Position numbers and translations under genes: made by a program
The notes under the pieces: generated by a model
Database searches by the model: none
Seen by the model: the letters and a program-made list of their open reading frames with translations, nothing else
Told to the model about the DNA's origin: nothing
From: Utricularia gibba
Taxonomy: Eukaryota; Plantae; Magnoliophyta
Assembly: GCA_002189035.1 (NCBI GenBank)
Contig: CM007989.1
Location: forward strand, 1,054,001 to 1,118,000
Reading direction: 5' to 3'
DNA length: 64,000 bases
In this document: positions 37,100 to 46,156 of the stretch, in pieces
How the letters are laid out: each line of letters opens with the position of its first letter
Numbering within the stretch: position 1 is the first letter of the stretch

Positions 37100-37912
37100 C
37101 TATGAGATTTTACCTGCAGAAACTTCTTCTTCTTCGTCTACCTCAGCTCCATATCTCTCGTTCAGGAATTCGACGGCGCCTTTCGTGAGAACAATTTTTT
37201 CAGAATCTAAAATGTCGAATAGATTTAGGGTTCTTGGTGTAAGGAGCTTCAGGGTTCTGAGGTTTCTGCTTGACAGTTTCACATTTTCCGACACGTCCTT
37301 CAGAAGGAACATCGATTTCTTGGCAGGATCCAGCCCTAACCTCTTCATAAGCGCAATGAAATCCTTGGTTTTCGGCTTGTCGAATTTGTCTTCGAAATCT
37401 TCAACAACGATGGTGTTTTCAGCGGCGCTCGCAATCGCGGTGGAGATAGCGAGTCTCTTTTCCTTCTTGTTGATCTTAATTGACCAATCCTTCGGCTTAG
37501 GGCCAAACACGACCCCACCGCCTGGTCGGAGAGGCGTGCGTTGAGACCCACGGCGGGCGTGGCCGGTCTTCTTCTGCTGGTAGGGCTTTTTGCCGCCGCC
37601 TCTGACCTCGCCGCGGGTAAGCGTCGAGGCAGTGCCGCGCCGGCGGTTAGTGAGATCGGTGGTGATTCCACGGTGGACGACTGACCTCGCCGTGTCGGAG
37701 GCGGCGGATTTGAGGTTGAGGAGAGTGCTACCTACTTCAGTTCCTTCGAATGACAGCACGGGGAGAGACGTGAGCTCTGAGCGAATGGCGGCGCCACGGA
37801 ATGTGGGGCGGCGCTGGGAGACGATGAATTGATGCTTCGTATTCTGATTGGATCGGAAAATCGAAGAGGAAAAGAAGGAGATCGAAGAAGGGGAACACGC
37901 TGAAGCCGCCAT
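37100..37912 (-). CDS. RPL4: Plastid 50S ribosomal protein L4 (uL4c), intronless
   Basis: Ser-rich transit peptide, RRGTASTLTRGEVRGGGKKPYQQKKTGHARRGS, GGVVFGPKPKDWS. Confidence 0.96.
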   Translation of the reverse strand: MAASACSPSSISFFSSSIFRSNQNTKHQFIVSQRRPTFRGAAIRSELTSLPVLSFEGTEVGSTLLNLKSAASDTARSVVHRGITTDLTNRRRGTASTLTRGEVRGGGKKPYQQKKTGHARRGSQRTPLRPGGGVVFGPKPKDWSIKINKKEKRLAISTAIASAAENTIVVEDFEDKFDKPKTKDFIALMKRLGLDPAKKSMFLLKDVSENVKLSSRNLRTLKLLTPRTLNLFDILDSEKIVLTKGAVEFLNERYGAEVDEEEEVSAGKIS

Positions 37913-38880: not shown

Positions 38881-38999
38881 CGACAATTCCAGAATCAAGA
38901 ACCCGAGGAAATCATTCAACTTGAAGAACAGCACGTAGGTACGGGTCGGGGTAGGGGTGCGGGTGCCCATGTTTCACGCTTTACTGGGGACTCGTGAAG

Positions 39000-40365
39000 T
39001 TAGTTGCCTGTAATCGCCGACATAAACTTTTCTAAAGCCACCACAGACGACCCACCGGGTTTTATCGCCGCCGCAGCAGAGTGCATCATCCCTCGACCCG
39101 ACGCCGCAATTCTACTCCGGCCTTTAACTCCATCAGTTCTCTCACACGCTTCTCGAACTCTGCCGCCGTGATTAAGCCGTCGGCTTCTTCGTCTAATGGC
39201 AACGCTATCCTCAGTTCTTCTACCAGAAAAACTCTGTTCATCCTCTGCTCTGCATACATCGGCAGCCCGATAATTGGAACGCCGTTGGACACCGCTTCCA
39301 GAATTGAGTTGTGGCCACAGTGGGAAACGAACCCGCCCACGGAATTGTGTCCCAGCACCGCCGTCTGCGGCGCCCACGACTTCAGAACAAGCCCCCTGTT
39401 CTTAGTCCTCTGTAAGAAGCCTTCCGGCAGCAATGATTCCAAGTCGGGCTCATCCCCCCCGTGGAGCCCAACTCTGGCGGGTTTCTCACCGCCCATAGGA
39501 ATCTATGACCGCTATTTTCCAACCCCGTGGCCAATTCTCTCAGTTGTCTTCGGGGAAATCTTCCCCTCCGGCCAAAACAGAGAAAAATAACGCTTTTACT
39601 GGGCTGCGTATCGAGCCACTTCAAACACTCGTGGCTCTCACCACCCCCGCCGCCGCCCCACAACATAGGTAAGATGGGGTAAATCGGTGGACTCGGCGCC
39701 TCCGGTACGCACAACCCATTTGTGATGGCTTCAATGGCTCTAAACTCTAGCGCCTGAAAACTGAAAACGACGATTCCAGCTGATTTGCGAAAACTCCTCG
39801 CCATCGCTAGGAAGTGGTTGTAAAGATTACTCTTAGGAAATACCACAATCTTGGGTAAATCTGAAGAGTGTATCAGCGGGCACCCGGGAACATCAACGAC
39901 GCCGTCAAGCTCCGCCATGTCCACGGCGAAAGTGTCGTGCAAAGTCGGCCAATAAAGGCCGAGCGCAAGCCCAGAAGCTCCAGAAGTTTGAAGGAAGTAA
40001 GTGGGTATACCCAAACTAGAAGAAACCTCAAACGCCCAATTGCAGAACATATCCATCGCAAACGCCCTAATTCTCAATTTCTCCGAAATCTGCGTCAGCA
40101 CTAGCCGAAGATTAGGGTTGTTGAGACGGGGGATCTCAAAGAACAGCTCTATATGGTCAAATTTAGACCCCGGTGGAATCTCCGGCATGGGAAGGCGGTG
40201 GTACGTGACTGACGGCGCGGCGGAGAGGTCAGGGGCAGCGGCGGCGGTACTAATAAGGACGACGGAGATCGAGGGGTAGCGTTTCCCGATCAGGATCGCG
40301 AAATCCTTGATCGAGTTCAAGTGTTCCTGAGTTGAGTACAAGACTACCGCGTCGGACATCGCCAT
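39000..40365 (-). CDS. UGT88: UDP-glycosyltransferase, UGT88 family (UGT88D-like), copy 1, intronless
   Basis: N-terminus [18 protein letters not shown] with the catalytic His. PSPG box [44 protein letters not shown]. The only lesions are two single-G losses (39454-39460, 39090-39092), so the gene is probably intact. Confidence 0.88.
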
Positions 40366-41268
40366 GGCTCCCGGAAATGATAGCACACGACGCCTCCAAT
40401 ATAACTACATTCCGACGCCCCCGTTCGTTGCACCTAATTAGTTCGCTGCCGGGTGGTCCCACATTTTCATCGTACACGTCTTCTGTTTCCAGCTACCACC
40501 ATTCATTCCCGCCTTCTTCTAGGGCTATGAGTGTCAGTTAGTACAACACATTTTATCACCCGCAGTTTGATAGTCTCATAGTTGAAATCATATTTTTAAT
40601 TACAAAAATAGAGAATATAATTGATATTATACAAATATTTATTCATAAATTTTAATTTCTAAACATTCTTACTACCTGTATAGTCTTAACAAATCCAAAT
40701 AACAATAATTCATCTATCAAACACGTTTATTTCATCATTTATTTAAACCCAAATCATTTAAATATTAATTGCCTACCAAACGTGGCGTGAGCGAATTGGG
40801 ATTGCACGTTTTCATTATCAAATTTGATCAAACAATCATGCGATTGGTTCCATTAATATCGAAATCTGAAAAATAGAAATACCCTAGATTCAACAAGCGC
40901 TTCCTCTGGATTATATTATAAATTTGGGCATCCTTAATAAAATATATGAAAAAAATGATCACCCTCGATTAAAAATTTTTGAATCAAGATGATCAATTTT
41001 GTAAATGATTCATTACTAGGATGGAGTATATGCCGCTGTTCCTTCACCTTCACTTCATCCTCGTGGGTGTGACGTCAAACATGTGGGATCTCCTTGACTC
41101 TCAATGCCTGTTTGCCAAATATGAACAAATTGACGAGACATCGTCCCAAGGGTGGCATTACGTCAGTATTTAATTAAAAAAATATTCATGGATCTGAAGT
41201 GGAGGGTCCAGAATTCAGACCCAAGAGGAGCATGCCCGAATGGCTCCTTTCAAGTCCGACTTTGCAGG

Positions 41269-41771
41269 TAGGGATGAAAGTTAAAGCCCAGAATTCGGGC
41301 TTGGGTCTATACATTGATGACCCGAAAGATTGTCGGGCTTTTTGGCCCGAAGCCCTAAGCCCTTAGCGCCGATTGGCCTTCGGGCCATAAAGCCCGACGG
41401 GCCTAAAGCCAATTTAAAAATATGATTTTTATATATGATAATTATAATTATTTTTAATTTTTAATAATTAAAAATCATTTTATATGCATTATTTTATTTT
41501 TAGAATATATAATATGAATTAATAATTTATATAATAATTTTAAATTTTTTTTCTATAAATTATTTAAATAATATTAAAATGTATATTAATGTTTAATAAT
41601 TTTTTAAAATGTTTAATTTATTACATGATAGGCCCGTGGGCCAGGTAGGGCCAGCCCGACCCAATGAATAATCGGGCTAGGGCCATGCTAATCATATTTT
41701 TGTGTAATCGGGCTTTAGCCCGGCCCTAGCCCGAAACTTGACGAGGCCCTCTGAAATAACTTTCATGTCTA
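41269..41771. mobile_element. Non-autonomous hAT (Ac/Ds-like) element, 503 bp
   Basis: Left TIR TAGGGATGAAAGTTA; right TIR (reverse complement) TAGACATGAAAGTTA, 13/15 match. Perfect 8 bp TSD TTTGCAGG at 41261-41268 and 41772-41779. GGCCC/GCCCGA-rich subterminal arms flank an AT-rich core. Confidence 0.92.
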
Positions 41772-41785
41772 TTTGCAGGTAATGC

Positions 41786-42416
41786 GTTTCTATTCTGAAT
41801 CTTTTTCTCGCTGGCTGTGGCTGTAGTCAGTGGTTGTAAGAGACTGGTTTATGCCGATTTTGATGAACCAGTTTTCTCGGTTTTGCAGTACGGCATGGTT
41901 TTGAAGACTAGTTGTTCAAGCTTTGCAGGGCTAGCAGCGCCAGCGAGACCTCGCCGCTGGGTTGGTGGCCAATTCCAGTGTAGAGGAGAAAGAGCTTGCC
42001 CATCTTTATGAGCGTCGAAAATTCCCATACCCTGGTGATGAAGCAGCCATGAAAAGAGTTGATTATGTTAAAATTAAGTATATGATGAATCCATCGAGTT
42101 AAATTCACAATAAATATGAATTATATTAAATCAATTAATAATAATTTTATAATTTTTATATATTTGATTATTTTAATTTATAATTCTAATTTAAGATTAT
42201 TTATTATAATACCCGATCTCAAGTCAAAATAGTATTCGATTCAATTAAAATTTGTTTTTTTTTATTTTAGGTAATGATTGAATCATAATTTGATATAATT
42301 TTTACATTAATTTCCATTCAGACCCATATAATTATGAGAAGGAAATTTTGGACAAGATGTTCTAGCACCAAGGCTTGAAGCCATGGTCGCGGTTGAGAAA
42401 TGAGGTGATTGCTGAG
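41786..42416 (+). pseudogene. Degraded copy of the gene at 45142-46156
   Basis: Aligns by eye to 45552-46127 (the intron end, TSPLGWW, ELAHLYERRKFPYPGDEAAM, NEVIAE). It has a ~125 nt deletion, frameshifts and a ~250 bp AT-rich insert. Confidence 0.85.
42061..42313. mobile_element. AT-rich insertion (putative MITE) inside the pseudogene
   Basis: It interrupts homology to the intact copy and has degenerate inverted termini (ATTATGTTAAAATTA..TATGAT-like at both ends). No clean TSD was found. Confidence 0.45.
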
Positions 42417-42824
42417 GATACTGAATTCAAAGTTCTCAGCCCTAAAGGTTGAACATCGTGGGGGAGAAAGGATTGCTAACTCCATGGGAATTGGGATGTC
42501 GTTGATTCCCTCACACTGTTCGAAGCAAAGTCTGAGTGCTAACAGATTGAGAGCCAACAACTTATTTCATACAGATGAAACTGCAATCCAAACTCATTCA
42601 GTAACACATAAAGAAAGGAGAATTGAGGGAATCAAGTTTCACACCGCTGCAGGCCACAGTTTCAGATTTCTCTGAATCAACAAGCAATTCATGGTTAGAC
42701 GAAGGAGGCTGCAAGTCAAGTTTTTCTGGGCATTGGCTGGCTGTGTCGTGATAAGTCTACATGTTGCACTAGGGTCGTTCATTATTCATGGGGATGTCGA
42801 AATGTTCACAGCGCACTAGTGAGG

Positions 42825-44175
42825 TTAGTTGCCTGTAATCGACGCGAAGAACTTTTCCATAGCAACCATACACGATCCACCAGCTTTCATCGCCGCCGCT
42901 GCAGAGTGCATCATCTCCTGTGACCGACGCCGCAATTCTACGCCGGCCTTCGACCCCATCAGCTCTCTCACACGCTTCTCCAACTCCGTCGCCGTGATTA
43001 GGCCGTCGGCGTCCTCGTCCAATGGCAACGCCAGCCTCTGTTCCTCCACCAGAAAAACCCTGTTCATCCTCTGCTCTGCATAGAGCGGCAGCCCGATAAT
43101 TGGAACGCCGTTGGCAACCGCTTCCAGAATCGAGTTGTGGCCACAGTGGGAAATGAATCCACCGACAGAAGCGTGCCCCAACACCGCCCTCTGCGGTGCC
43201 CATGACTTCAGAACAAGCCCCCTGTTCCTAGTCCTCTGTAAGAACCCCTCGGGCAGCAATGATTCCAAGTCCGGCTCATCCCCCGCCGCGGAACCCAAAT
43301 CCGGCGGAATTCTCATCGCTATTTTCTAACCCAATGGCCAATTCTCTCAGCTGTCTGCGGGGAAGCACCCCCCTCCGGCCAAAACAGAGAAAAATGACGC
43401 TTTTGCTAGGCTGCGTATCCAGCCACTTCAAACACTCGTGGCTCTCGCCCCCCGCCCCCGCCGCCGCCCCATGACATAGGTAAGATAGGATAAATCGGAG
43501 GAGTCGGCGCCTCTGGTACGCACAACCCATTTGTGATGGCTTCAATGGCTCTGGACCCAAACGCCTGAAAAGTGAAAACGACGATTCCTGTTGATTTGCG
43601 GAGAGTCCTCGCCATCACTAGGAAGTGGTTGTAAAGATTACTCTTAGGAAATACCAAAATCTTTGGTAAATCTGAAGAGTGTATCAGCGGGCAGCCGGGA
43701 ACACCAAAGACGCCGTCAAGCTCCTCAATGTCCACGGCGAAAGTGTCGTGTAAAGTCGGCCAATAAAGGCCAACCGCAAGCCCACCAGCTCCAGGAGTTA
43801 CTATTAAGTACGTAGGTAAACCCAAACTAGTAGAAACCTCAAACGCCCAACAGCAGAACTGATCCATTATAAAAGCCCTAATTCTCAATTTCTCCGAAAT
43901 CTGCGTCAAGGCTAGCCGGAGATTATCGTTGTTGAGACGGGGGATCTCGAAGAGCAACTCTATATGGTTAAAATTAGATCCCGGTGGAATCTCCGGCATG
44001 GGAAGGCAGTGGTACGTGACTGACGGCGCGGCGGAGAGGTCAGGGCAGCGGCAGCGGTACTAATAAGGACGACGGAGATTGAGGGGTGGTGTTTCCCGAT
44101 CAATATCGCGAAATTCTTGATCGAATTCATGTGCTCCTGAGTTGTGTACACGACTACGGCGTCGGTCATGGCCAT
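42825..44175 (-). pseudogene. UGT88: UGT88 copy 2, probably non-functional
   Basis: Close paralogue of copy 1. Besides homopolymer indels (44043-44045 and the Gly tract near 43448-43470), it lacks 20 nt at 43316/43317, which removes GHRFLWA and shifts the frame. Confidence 0.72.
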
Positions 44176-45141
44176 GGCTCCCGGAAATGAAATCACTCGA
44201 CGCCTCCAATATAACTACATCCATAAGCGCCGTTGCAGTTCTACCCAATTTTGTAGTCGCAACTTGCAATGCAGTTGTCGTACACGTGCTCCGATCCCAT
44301 CCCCGACAATTTACTCCGGCGGTCCCTTGCGGTAAAAGTGTCCAGCTAACCTAATGCAACACAGTTTCTTACAGTCACCGAACAAGGCGCGATTGCAGGT
44401 TTCATTACCAGTCTTGATCAAACGCGCCCATGCGATTTGTTGCATGTAAGATTCAGCAGGCGCTTCCTTCAGATCTTCCTTCCCTGTGGTTGATCAAATG
44501 GGCAGCATCATCGCCCCAATCTTCAGTTCATACTTGTCGCTGTAAGACGTTCCGGTCAAACCTCTCTGTAATCCACCGACGCCGAATATTCCATGGATAT
44601 GCCAAATGCTTCTCATTGCCAACTGGCCAACTGGGCTTCTGCATGAAACATCTCCGCCCACATAAATTTAATGAATTGACTATATTGAATTTTTTAAATT
44701 TTTAATTTTTAATTTCTATTATTTTATAATAAAATCAAAATTTTATATTTTATTAACTTTATGAATTATTTAATTTATTATATTTTTAAAAACAATAAAT
44801 ATGATATTAATTTTAAAAAATTATAATATTAATTTTTTTGTTTAGTCTAAAATAATATTTATTTTTTATTATATTTGAAATACAATTTTAAATTATAAAA
44901 CACGGCCTTAGAAATGTACGTCACTAAATCTCTTCTTAGAACTCTCCACAACTTTTTTATTTTTTTTTAAATTAAATATATAGATATTTAATTTAATAAA
45001 TAGCAAAGCAAAAAGCTAAAGAAAAAAGTTTAGCAGGGAGCTATGAACGTTCCCAAATTACCCTGTTTCGGGATTTTTAAGATAGATTTTCGGGTGAAAT
45101 AAAAAGAAAAATCAGCTTAAAATCTCCGTCGGCGTGCCTCC

Positions 45142-46156
45142 ATGGTTCTAAAGCGATACCAGCGCGCTAAAACAGGTGGGATCTGCTTAACCCTCGATTT
45201 GCAACTCCGTGATTATAACTTGCGCCTTTGATTCGTTTTTTGTTCATCGCTTGTTTGAAGGGTTCATTTAGGGGGGGGGGGGGGGCAAATTTAGAGTTCA
45301 TTTATGTTGATTTTCGCGTTGCGTTCCACCTGTTCGACAAAATGCCTAATTGAGCTGTGGTCGTACTGAATTTGGAATGGACATATGCTGTTAATATTAA
45401 TGTTCTTTTCCCAATGTACTGTTCAGTTTTTCTTACATACGATGTTAGACTCTACCTTCCCTGATGAAGGATACAATTCATCTCTGTATATCAAGGAAAT
45501 GGTAGTGTAAAAAGGACAATCTCGCAGACTTAATTTGATGGGGGGTTTCCTGTTTCTATTCTGAATCTTGTTTCTCGCTGGCTGTGGCGGTGGCTGTAGT
45601 CAGTGGTTTTAAAAGGCTGTTTTATACCAATTTTGATGAACCAGTTTTATCATTTTTGTTGTATGACACGGTTTTGAACCATAGATGCTCAAGTTTTGCA
45701 GGGCTAGCAGCTTTGCAGTCATTCAAAGCCGAGAAGTACCTGAAAAAAATAGGACTAGGGAAAGAGGATCACCATTTCTGGAAGCAAATCATCAAAGGGC
45801 TGTTGGGCACCTATGCCCTCTTCGGCGCAGCATGGCTGTACAATGAAACCTCGCCGCTGGGTTGGTGGTCAATGAAGCCCAGGCCAAAGGAGGAGAGAGA
45901 GCTTGCCCATCTCTATGAGCGCCGAAAATTCCCATACCCTGGTGATGAAGCAGCAATGGAAGAGTTCATCGCCAAGGGTGGGATGATCGGAACAGCCATC
46001 GGCCCAAAAGGGATCATTGACTCCGATCCAGACTCGTACAATTATCAGAAGGAATTGCAGGACAAGACGTTTGAGCAGGAAGCCTTGAAGCTGTGGTTGA
46101 GGATGAGAAATGAGGTGATTGCTGAGCTTCAAGAGAAAGGGTTTGATGTTGAGTAG
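45142..46156 (+). CDS. Uncharacterised plant protein with one predicted TM segment (gene X)
   Basis: Long open exon EKYLKKIGLGKEDHHFW..ETSPLGWWSMKPRPKEERELAHLYERRKFPYPGD..KLWLRMRNEVIAELQEKGFDVE*. A likely first exon, 45142-45175 (MVLKRYQRAKT), splices in phase 1 to acceptors at 45701 or 45710. The N-terminus is tentative. Confidence 0.75.
45271..45285. repeat. G15 homopolymer in the first intron of gene X
   Basis: Read directly. Confidence 0.9.

What the first reader, a model, noticed from the sequence alone, without database searches (positions are those of the whole stretch)
39245..39376. UGT88 with His at the sugar-donor specificity position of the PSPG box (HCGHNS)
Seen: both paralogues read [12 protein letters not shown] (CAC at 39311-39313 and 43137-43139), so this is not a read error. 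Both also have GLP(M/L)YAEQ in place of the usual WP. Known: most plant UGTs have HCGWNS and use UDP-glucose, while Lamiales UGT88D flavonoid 7-O-glucuronosyltransferases have Arg here (Perilla UGT88D7 Arg350), which confers UDP-glucuronic acid preference. CAC is one transition from Arg CGC but three changes from Trp TGG. The N-terminus (YSTQEHLNS) is UGT88D-like. The partner site (UGT88D7 Ser127) appears to be Thr here (LQTSGA / IVTPGA; by-eye alignment). Inference: a third donor-specificity state derived from the glucuronosyltransferase lineage, possibly pH-dependent, dual-donor or using another UDP-sugar.
Basis: partly seen in the sequence, partly recalled or inferred. Interest (0 to 1): 0.75.

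Follow-up and report, generated by a model that had tools for sequence, protein, structure and literature searches.

The report
Bladderwort flavonoid sugar-transferase with unusual histidine
A bladderwort-family plant has one working and one dead copy of a flavonoid sugar-attaching enzyme with a rare histidine at the site that selects the sugar, but the gene descends from a glutamine-type, probably glucose-using branch, so it is a modest, untested variant.

Summary
Both tandem minus-strand UGT genes read [12 protein letters not shown]. The His codon CAC is at 39311-39313 and 43137-43139, and 39245-39376 is exactly the 44-codon PSPG box. Leu replaces the usual Trp at PSPG position 38, and Thr sits where Perilla UGT88D7 has Ser127.

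- **Copy 1** looks frameshifted only because the assembly dropped two homopolymer bases. Contigs from three other studies restore them, giving an intact 455-aa ORF that appears transcribed.
- **Copy 2** carries a real 20-bp deletion and is a pseudogene.

- The genes lie in the Lamiales UGT88D-like clade, but inside its Gln-type subclade (HCGQSS/QCS/QGS), next to two Genlisea aurea genes.
- One of those Genlisea genes also has HCGHNS, with codon CAT.
- An AU test rejects grouping them with the Arg-type glucuronosyltransferases (p=0.0008).
- Codons fit Arg CGG to Gln CAG to His CAC/CAT.
- His is not a "third state". Gln is common, and His recurs in two other Lamiales genes (HCGHGS, HCGHVS).
- A probable Gln-type member, Salvia plebeia SpUGT1, uses UDP-glucose.

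Most likely this is a flavonoid O-glucosyltransferase. Donor preference is untested.

The parts
39000..40365 (-). UGT copy 1. ATG at 40365, TAA at 39002-39000. It is an intact 455-aa ORF once two single bases missing from the assembly are added.
   Evidence: Searches show three reading-frame pieces; contigs of X2, X6 and X8 carry one extra base behind 39089/39090 and one behind 39453; with those bases the ORF is 455 aa with a single terminal stop. Pfam UDPGT, E=4e-18; both pieces match solved UGT 8INP at E about 1e-46.
39245..39376 (-). PSPG box of copy 1 (44 codons). This is the finding's interval.
   Evidence: Conserved positions Q4, L8, H19, G21, S24, E27, P39 and E43-Q44 are all present. 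Position 22 is His, 23 is Asn and 38 is Leu.
39311..39313 (-). His352 codon CAC (PSPG position 22)
   Evidence: No variant at this codon in four public runs.
39263..39265 (-). Leu codon CTG at PSPG position 38, where relatives have Trp
   Evidence: Trp in 219 of 228 related boxes, Phe in 5, and Leu only in the two window copies.
39985..39987 (-). Thr127 codon ACT, aligned with Ser127 of the Perilla Arg-type enzyme
   Evidence: Ser in 100% of the Arg-type rows, Thr in 96% of the Gln-type and 79% of the Trp-type rows.
39089..39090 (.). Assembly error: one base missing from a G-run on the minus strand. It causes the false stop after ...RRRVEG.
   Evidence: table 4: an inserted base here in X2, X6 and X8, which come from three studies.
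39453..39454 (.). Assembly error: one base missing from a 7-G run on the minus strand. It causes the false frameshift after [10 protein letters not shown].
   Evidence: table 4: an inserted C behind 39453 in X2, X6 and X8. column 947.
42825..44175 (-). UGT copy 2. It is a transcribed pseudogene whose reading frame is lost after about 256 codons.
   Evidence: Searches show +4 bp and -20 bp relative to copy 1; the 1-bp gap at 44042 is an assembly error (extra G in all four runs), and X2 spans the 20-bp deletion without a gap; its branch is about 3.5 times longer than copy 1's, with 31 derived residue changes against 15.
43071..43202 (-). PSPG box of copy 2, out of frame with the gene's start. 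His codon CAC is at 43137-43139.
43318..43320 (.). Junction of the 20-bp deletion in copy 2, which removes the codons for SGHRFLW
   Evidence: columns 893-912. X2 record 13 (42541-43453) crosses it with no gap.
43450..43453 (.). Four extra bases in the poly-Gly G-rich run of copy 2. Not verified by reads.
   Evidence: The contigs end at this point.

Best explanation
The window holds a tandem pair of Lamiales-specific UGT88D-like flavonoid glycosyltransferase genes. The plant belongs to the bladderwort family and is probably Utricularia gibba.

- **Copy 1** is an intact, apparently transcribed 455-aa enzyme. The catalytic His15/Asp105 pair and all conserved PSPG positions are present. Its two 'frameshifts' are homopolymer errors of the assembly.
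- **Copy 2** is a transcribed pseudogene with a real 20-bp deletion.

The His at PSPG position 22 is inherited, not a read error, and it is kept under purifying selection. It arose within the Gln-type subclade of the family by a single change, CAG to CAC/CAT, together with Ser to Asn at position 23.

The protein lacks both marks of the Arg-type UDP-glucuronic-acid enzymes (Arg at position 22, Ser127). It carries the Gln-type signature (Thr127, Trp139).

Inferred, not shown: the enzyme most likely glycosylates a flavone or flavonoid hydroxyl with a neutral sugar, most probably UDP-glucose. In that reading His acts as a polar, largely uncharged stand-in for Gln beside the sugar's C6.
For: **Anatomy**
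- Sequence, frames and copy alignment.
- Independent contigs of three or four studies restore the frame at 39089/90, 39453 and 44042.
- X2 confirms the 20-bp deletion in copy 2.
- Contigs of X2 and X8 cover only the two genes and not the 2-kb spacer, which is the pattern expected of RNA.

**Family and placement**
- 120 UGT88 hits. The best is Genlisea aurea EPS60060.1, 66% identical over the full length, also with HCGHNS.
- The trees place the window genes with the two Genlisea genes (100 SH-aLRT) inside the Gln-type clade (95-98), with or without positions 22-23.
- The AU test rejects union with the Arg clade (p=0.00076).
- Diagnostic columns: Ser127/Arg in Arg-type rows against Thr127/Trp139 here.

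**Codons and selection**
- Window CAC-AAC, Genlisea CAT-AAC, Genlisea paralogue CAG-GGT, Paulownia CAG-AGT; Arg-type genes use AGG or CGG.
- dN/dS is 0.14 between copy 1 and the Genlisea gene, and the His codon differs synonymously.

**Function of relatives**
- Arg against Trp at position 22 sets UDP-GlcA against UDP-Glc (PMC11096472; PMC8888134).
- Salvia plebeia SpUGT1 (UGT88A47) makes hispidulin 7-O-glucoside from UDP-glucose (PMC10461478). Its forward primer encodes MLKMEN, the start of the HCGQSS protein P0028.
Against: - No donor or acceptor has been measured for any His-type enzyme.
- The link between P0028 and SpUGT1 rests on a primer match. The reverse primer differs at 2 of 18 bases, and only UDP-glucose was offered in that study, so the Gln type's real preference is not established.
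- A partly protonated His could still attract a carboxylate.
- Leu at PSPG position 38 is unique to these copies, and its effect is unknown.
- The RNA nature of runs X2 and X8 is inferred from where their contigs lie, not from their records.
- The tree groups the Genlisea His-type and Gln-type genes together (97 SH-aLRT). His was therefore either gained twice or reverted once, and this is unresolved.
- The trees are 'quick' IQ-TREE searches; the careful search did not finish.
Confidence: 0.55

Rival explanations
1. The His-type enzyme keeps or regains a preference for UDP-glucuronic acid, or uses both donors. A protonated imidazole would replace the guanidinium of Arg, possibly making activity depend on pH.
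For: - Position 22 is the proven glucuronic-acid determinant in this family.
- His can carry a positive charge.
- The Gln-type clade must have passed through Arg (TGG to CGG to CAG).
- His also arose in a Phtheirospermum gene that sits among Arg-type genes.
Against: - The genes nest in the Gln-type clade, not the Arg clade.
- The second Arg-type mark, Ser127, is Thr here.
- At cytosolic pH, His is mostly uncharged (general knowledge).
- A probable Gln-type relative works with UDP-glucose.
Confidence: 0.15
2. The His-Asn pair at positions 22-23, with Leu at 38, retunes the pocket for a different neutral sugar such as UDP-xylose, -arabinose, -galactose or -rhamnose.
For: - Changes at PSPG positions 22 and 23 have altered donor scope in other UGTs: a Pro-to-Trp change at position 22 in TcOGT4 and Lys360Asn at position 23 in UGT78H2 (review).
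- The HN pair is shared by the window genes and the Genlisea gene with different His codons, which fits either retention or parallel gain.
- Leu at position 38 is unique.
Against: - No direct evidence.
- Positions 43-44 are Glu-Gln, as in the glucose-using relatives.
- Gln and His are similar in size and hydrogen bonding.
Confidence: 0.15
3. The locus is decaying. His and Leu are tolerated or damaging changes in a gene that is losing its function, as copy 2 already has.
For: - Copy 2 is dead.
- The Trp-to-Leu change at position 38 is unique to these copies.
- The window assembly itself shows copy 1 as broken.
Against: - Copy 1 is intact in contigs from three other studies and appears transcribed.
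- dN/dS is 0.14 against Genlisea.
- Copy 1 has half as many derived residue changes as copy 2.
- The catalytic dyad and all conserved PSPG positions are present.
- The His is shared with an intact Genlisea gene.
Confidence: 0.1

Closest known systems
Lamiales flavonoid 7-O-glucuronosyltransferases, UGT88D1/D4/D6/D7/D8 (Noguchi et al. 2009, as summarised in PMC11096472 and PMC8888134)
   Same: Same Lamiales-specific UGT88 clade (100 SH-aLRT). Same ..EHLN.. N-terminal motif, about 55% identity, and the same position in the PSPG box is the one that varies.
   Different: These enzymes have Arg at position 22 (HCGRSS) and Ser127. The window gene has His-Asn and Thr127. It falls outside their clade (AU p=0.00076).
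Gln-type subclade, HCGQSS/QCS/QGS: for example Salvia plebeia SpUGT1 = UGT88A47 (probably P0028), and Paulownia, Mentha, Erythranthe and Rehmannia genes annotated 'chalcone 4'-O-glucosyltransferase-like'
   Same: The window genes nest inside this clade. They share Thr127 and Trp139 and are 56-60% identical. His is one base away from its Gln codon CAG.
   Different: Position 22 is His rather than Gln, position 23 is Asn rather than Ser, Cys or Gly, and position 38 is Leu rather than Trp.
Genlisea aurea hypothetical protein M569_14743 (EPS60060.1), uncharacterised
   Same: Closest relative in the trees (66% identity, same Lentibulariaceae clade). It has the same [11 protein letters not shown] motif and is an intact ORF.
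   Different: His is encoded by CAT rather than CAC. It keeps Trp at position 38. In the tree it pairs with a Genlisea Gln-type paralogue (HCGQGS).
Other His-bearing Lamiales UGT88 genes: L007:96-1478 (a transcript contig from run SRR30527281, HCGHGS) and a partial Phtheirospermum japonicum protein P0210 (HCGHVS)
   Same: His at PSPG position 22 within the same Lamiales clade.
   Different: These are independent origins. The first is closest to Erythranthe and Paulownia Gln-type genes, the second to Orobanchaceae Arg-type genes. Position 23 also differs (Gly, Val).
Bc7OUGT, PDB 8INP/8ITA, the closest solved structure
   Same: Both window pieces align along their length at E about 1e-46. The PSPG box aligns residue for residue.
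   Different: It has Trp where the window has His (HCGWNS) and Trp where the window has Leu (AWPMYAEQ).

Membership tests
Plant family-1 UDP-glycosyltransferases (UGT, GT1) | 44-residue PSPG box with conserved positions 4, 8, 19, 21, 24, 27 and 39 and an acidic residue plus Gln at positions 43-44 | tested here: met
   Q4, L8, H19, G21, S24, E27, P39, E43 and Q44 are present in copy 1. Pfam UDPGT, E=4e-18.
Plant family-1 UDP-glycosyltransferases (UGT, GT1) | Catalytic His-Asp dyad in the N-terminal domain | tested here: met
   His15 aligns with His in 95 of 99 rows, and Asp105 with Asp in 96 of 99.
Plant family-1 UDP-glycosyltransferases (UGT, GT1) | GT-B fold | not tested
   Inferred only from sequence matches to solved UGTs (8INP, E about 1e-46 for each piece).
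Lamiales-specific UGT88D-like clade | Monophyly with the Lamiales UGT88D genes, apart from UGT88A1/B1-type genes of other orders | tested here: met
   a clade of 74 (or 37) rows with 100 SH-aLRT contains the window genes.
Arg-type flavonoid 7-O-glucuronosyltransferases (UGT88D1/4/6/7/8) | Arg at PSPG position 22 | tested here: not met
   His (CAC) in both copies.
Arg-type flavonoid 7-O-glucuronosyltransferases (UGT88D1/4/6/7/8) | Ser at the position of UGT88D7 Ser127 | tested here: not met
   Thr127 here, Ser in 100% of 40 Arg-type rows.
Arg-type flavonoid 7-O-glucuronosyltransferases (UGT88D1/4/6/7/8) | Membership of the Arg-type clade | tested here: not met
   AU p=0.00076 against a clade of the Lentibulariaceae genes plus the main Arg clade.
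Arg-type flavonoid 7-O-glucuronosyltransferases (UGT88D1/4/6/7/8) | Preference for UDP-glucuronic acid | not testable with these tools
   Needs an enzyme assay.
Gln-type UGT88 subclade (SpUGT1/UGT88A47-like) | Membership of the clade | tested here: met
   98 and 95 SH-aLRT, the second with positions 22-23 masked.
Gln-type UGT88 subclade (SpUGT1/UGT88A47-like) | Gln at PSPG position 22 | tested here: not met
   His here. Gln in 25 of 25 other full-length clade members.
Gln-type UGT88 subclade (SpUGT1/UGT88A47-like) | Flavone 7-O-glucosylation with UDP-glucose | not testable with these tools
   Known only for SpUGT1 (PMC10461478). Its identity with P0028 is inferred from primers.

The most novel reading that the evidence does not exclude
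The His-Asn pair at PSPG positions 22-23 was acquired in parallel in Utricularia (CAC) and Genlisea (CAT) from a Gln-Ser ancestor. It defines a distinct sugar-donor specificity, for example pH-gated use of UDP-glucuronic acid or a switch to another UDP-sugar. That would make His a further functional state of the Lamiales donor switch.
Probability: 0.12. Interest if true: 0.6.

Novelty: new member of a known kind. Interest (0 to 1): 0.3.

Why it matters
PSPG position 22 is one of the few places where a single residue is known to switch a plant glycosyltransferase between UDP-glucose and UDP-glucuronic acid.

This survey shows that the position is unusually variable in the Lamiales UGT88D-like clade: Trp, Arg, Gln, His and Ser all occur. 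The codons line up as a chain of single steps, TGG to CGG to CAG to CAC/CAT. In 146 motif matches from more distant UGT clusters the position is Trp in 141 and never His.

The Gln and His states appear barely studied. Testing them would show whether the switch has more than two settings, which is useful for engineering flavonoid glucuronides and glucosides.

For genome annotation, the case shows how homopolymer errors in a long-read assembly can make a live gene look dead.

Tried and rejected
- **Pseudogene pair.** I first read both copies as pseudogenes because the window shows frameshifts in both. I dropped this for copy 1 after the public contigs restored the frame.
- **Direct Arg-to-His origin (CGC to CAC).** Rejected on three grounds: the tree placement, the AU test, and the Arg codons actually used, which are AGG and CGG.
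- **Papers.**
  - Noguchi et al. 2009 is not held under its DOI or PMC id, so its content is cited only through PMC11096472 and PMC8888134.
  - A search on 'Arg350' with min_terms 1 returned only human-genetics papers.
  - Searches for HCGHNS, HCGQSS, HCGRSS and HCGHGS, and for Utricularia flavone glucuronides, gave nothing useful.
- **Careful tree.** The 'careful' IQ-TREE search did not finish in the time allowed, so the quick trees were used.
- **Selection on the two copies.** The difference in the nonsynonymous-to-synonymous ratio between the copy 1 and copy 2 branches is not significant (Fisher p=0.34).
- **Neighbour genes.** Pfam found no family for the head-to-head neighbour ORFs.

Full report
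**1. Observation**

The interval 39245-39376, read on the minus strand, is exactly the 44-codon PSPG box of a UDP-glycosyltransferase.
- His (CAC, 39313-39311) is at box position 22, Asn at 23 and Leu (CTG, 39265-39263) at 38.
- A second copy about 3.8 kb downstream has the same [12 protein letters not shown], with CAC at 43139-43137.
- The two copies are 93% identical in DNA and lie in a tandem duplication that also includes a head-to-head neighbour gene.
- Their shared His is therefore one inherited character, not two observations.
- Pfam finds UDPGT in both C-terminal pieces.
- Both pieces of copy 1 match the solved UGT Bc7OUGT (8INP) at E about 1e-46. There, His aligns with the Trp of HCGWNS and Leu with the Trp of AWPMYAEQ.

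**2. Are the genes intact?**

In the window, copy 1 falls into three reading-frame pieces and copy 2 into four. I laid contigs of four public runs from four studies on 38990-44210.
- X2, X6 and X8 carry one extra base behind 39089/39090 and one behind 39453.
- All four runs carry an extra G behind 44042.
- All three sites are single bases missing from G or C runs, the typical error of a long-read assembly.
- With the two bases added, copy 1 is one ORF of 455 aa, from ATG 40365 to TAA 39000.
- Copy 2 still has four extra bases in its poly-Gly run (43450-43453, not verified because the contigs end there) and a 20-bp deletion near 43320 that removes SGHRFLW.
- X2 crosses that deletion without a gap, so it is real. 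Copy 2 loses its frame after about 256 codons.
- Contigs of X2 and X8 cover only 38990-40385 and 42541-44210, and nothing of the spacer except a repeated element. That is the pattern expected of RNA, so both copies look transcribed. This is an inference: the runs' records do not state their type.
- No run shows a variant in either His codon.

**3. How sequences were handled**

The search tools received only pieces of the genes, by reference. The joined, corrected copy 1 and the X-padded copy 2 were built and used only inside scripts, for the trees and for dN/dS. They were not sent to any search or structure tool.

**4. Relatives**

The N-terminal piece finds 120 UGT88 proteins, almost all from Lamiales.
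- The best hit is Genlisea aurea EPS60060.1, 66% identical to corrected copy 1 over the full length. It also reads [11 protein letters not shown] and keeps Trp at position 38.
- Notes from other agents of this scan call the genome Utricularia gibba. I did not test this, but the sister relation to Genlisea fits.
- Among the first 120 hits, position 22-23 is RS in 44, WN in 32, QS in 16 (plus about ten QC or QG) and HN in one.

**5. Phylogeny**

- *99-row tree.* The window copies and two Genlisea genes (one HN, one QG) form a clade with 100 SH-aLRT. That clade sits inside a 28-row Gln-type clade (98). The Gln-type clade is separate from the main Arg-type clade, a Gesneriaceae Arg-type clade and the Antirrhinum/Linaria Trp-type pair. 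All of these lie inside one Lamiales clade (100).
- *46-row tree with positions 22-23 masked.* It gives the same result: 95 for the Gln-type clade, 100 for the Lentibulariaceae clade and 97 for the two Genlisea genes together.
- *AU test.* Forcing the Lentibulariaceae genes to join the main Arg clade costs 40.7 log-likelihood units and is rejected (p=0.00076).
- *Diagnostic columns.* Columns that separate the groups agree with the tree. The Perilla protein with Arg at residue 350 has Ser127. All 40 Arg-type rows have Ser there, while the Gln-type rows and the window have Thr. At residue 139 the window has the Gln-type Trp, not the Arg-type Phe.

**6. Codons**

| Gene | Positions 22-23 |
|---|---|
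| Window copies | CAC AAC (His Asn) |
| Genlisea P0001 | CAT AAC (His Asn) |
| Genlisea P0059 | CAG GGT (Gln Gly) |
| Paulownia, Gln-type | CAG AGT (Gln Ser) |
| Sesamum and Erythranthe, Arg-type | AGG (Arg) |
| Dorcoceras, Arg-type | CGG (Arg) |

- His is one base from the neighbouring Gln codon and two from the Arg codons actually in use.
- TGG (Trp) can reach CAG (Gln) only through CGG (Arg) or TAG (stop). The Gln-type clade therefore probably had an Arg ancestor.
- Because the two Genlisea genes group together, His-Asn was either gained once and reverted in P0059 or gained twice. The base counts do not decide this.

**7. How rare is His at position 22?**

- A word search centred on the PSPG box of the Genlisea protein found one more case. 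It is a contig from run SRR30527281 that encodes an intact 460-aa UGT with HCGHGS, closest to Erythranthe and Paulownia Gln-type genes.
- A search with the C-terminal piece found a partial Phtheirospermum japonicum protein with HCGHVS. Its nearest relatives are Arg-type genes of Orobanchaceae.
- In the 150 best cluster representatives of a whole-library HMMER search, 146 motif matches were found. Position 22 was Trp in 141 and never His.
- His is therefore rare, confined so far to the Lamiales clade, and has arisen at least three times.
- No paper in the library contains any of the motif strings.

**8. Selection**

- dN/dS is 0.14 between copy 1 and the Genlisea His-type gene, and 0.30 between the two window copies.
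- With Genlisea as the outgroup, copy 2 has 31 derived residue changes and copy 1 has 15. Its branch is about 3.5 times longer.
- This fits relaxed constraint on copy 2. The difference in the N:S ratio between the two branches is not significant.
- The catalytic His15 and Asp105 are conserved in copy 1.

**9. What it most likely does**

- *From the literature.* Arg at position 22 gives the Lamiales enzymes their preference for UDP-glucuronic acid. Trp goes with UDP-glucose, and Arg-to-Trp swaps convert UGT88D4, D6 and D7 (PMC11096472; PMC8888134).
- *A likely Gln-type example.* Salvia plebeia SpUGT1 (UGT88A47) converts hispidulin to its 7-O-glucoside with UDP-glucose (PMC10461478). Its forward primer encodes MLKMEN, the start of the HCGQSS protein P0028, and no other SpUGT primer fits. 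The reverse primer differs at two bases, so the identification is probable, not certain. Only UDP-glucose was offered in that study.
- *Inference.* The window enzyme lacks Arg and Ser127 and belongs to the Gln-type clade. It most likely transfers glucose, or another neutral sugar, to a flavonoid hydroxyl.
- *Not excluded.* A role for a partly charged His in binding glucuronic acid, or a change of sugar, is not ruled out.

**10. Verdict**

It is wrong about the immediate lineage and about His being a 'third' state. The result is an ordinary new member of a known enzyme family, carrying a rare and uncharacterised residue at a known specificity site. It is worth a simple enzyme assay but is not a surprise to a specialist.

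Noticed in passing
window 39089-39090, 39453-39454, 44042-44043 (also 41064): This assembly drops single bases in homopolymer runs. Contigs from three or four independent studies carry an extra base at each of these sites. Other apparent frameshifts in this genome may have the same cause.
   Followed up: yes
window 38980-42416 and 42805-46126: A tandem duplication of about 3.8 kb includes the UGT and a head-to-head neighbour. The neighbour is an intact 190-aa ORF at 45584-46156 and a degraded copy at about 41812-42416. The UGT is intact in unit 1 and dead in unit 2, and the neighbour appears to be the reverse. Pfam finds no family for the neighbour.
   Followed up: partly
window 41265-41790: Contig depth rises several-fold here, and many partly fitting contigs end here in the DNA runs. 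This indicates a dispersed repeat. Another note of the scan calls it a hAT MITE.
   Followed up: no
window 37100-37912 (-): An intact 270-aa ORF for a ribosomal protein L4 (Pfam Ribosomal_L4, E=5e-58) with an N-terminal extension. It is probably the organellar L4.
   Followed up: no
L007:96-1478: A transcript contig from run SRR30527281 encodes an intact 460-aa Gln-clade UGT with HCGHGS and with Tyr in place of Trp at PSPG position 1 (SYAPQ). The gene caller had annotated only its C-terminal 250 aa.
   Followed up: partly
P0050, P0057, P0210 (Orobanchaceae members of the Arg-type clade): Within Orobanchaceae, position 22 of otherwise Arg-type genes is Trp (Castilleja, HCGWSS), Ser (Striga, HCGSSS) or His (Phtheirospermum, HCGHVS). 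The donor-switch residue varies repeatedly in parasitic Lamiales.
   Followed up: no
L001 and L002 (Genlisea aurea contigs): The two Genlisea UGT88 paralogues, His-type and Gln-type, lie on different contigs. One is next to an NDUFA5-like gene and the other next to a prolyl-tRNA synthetase gene. Neither contig shows the window's neighbours.
   Followed up: no
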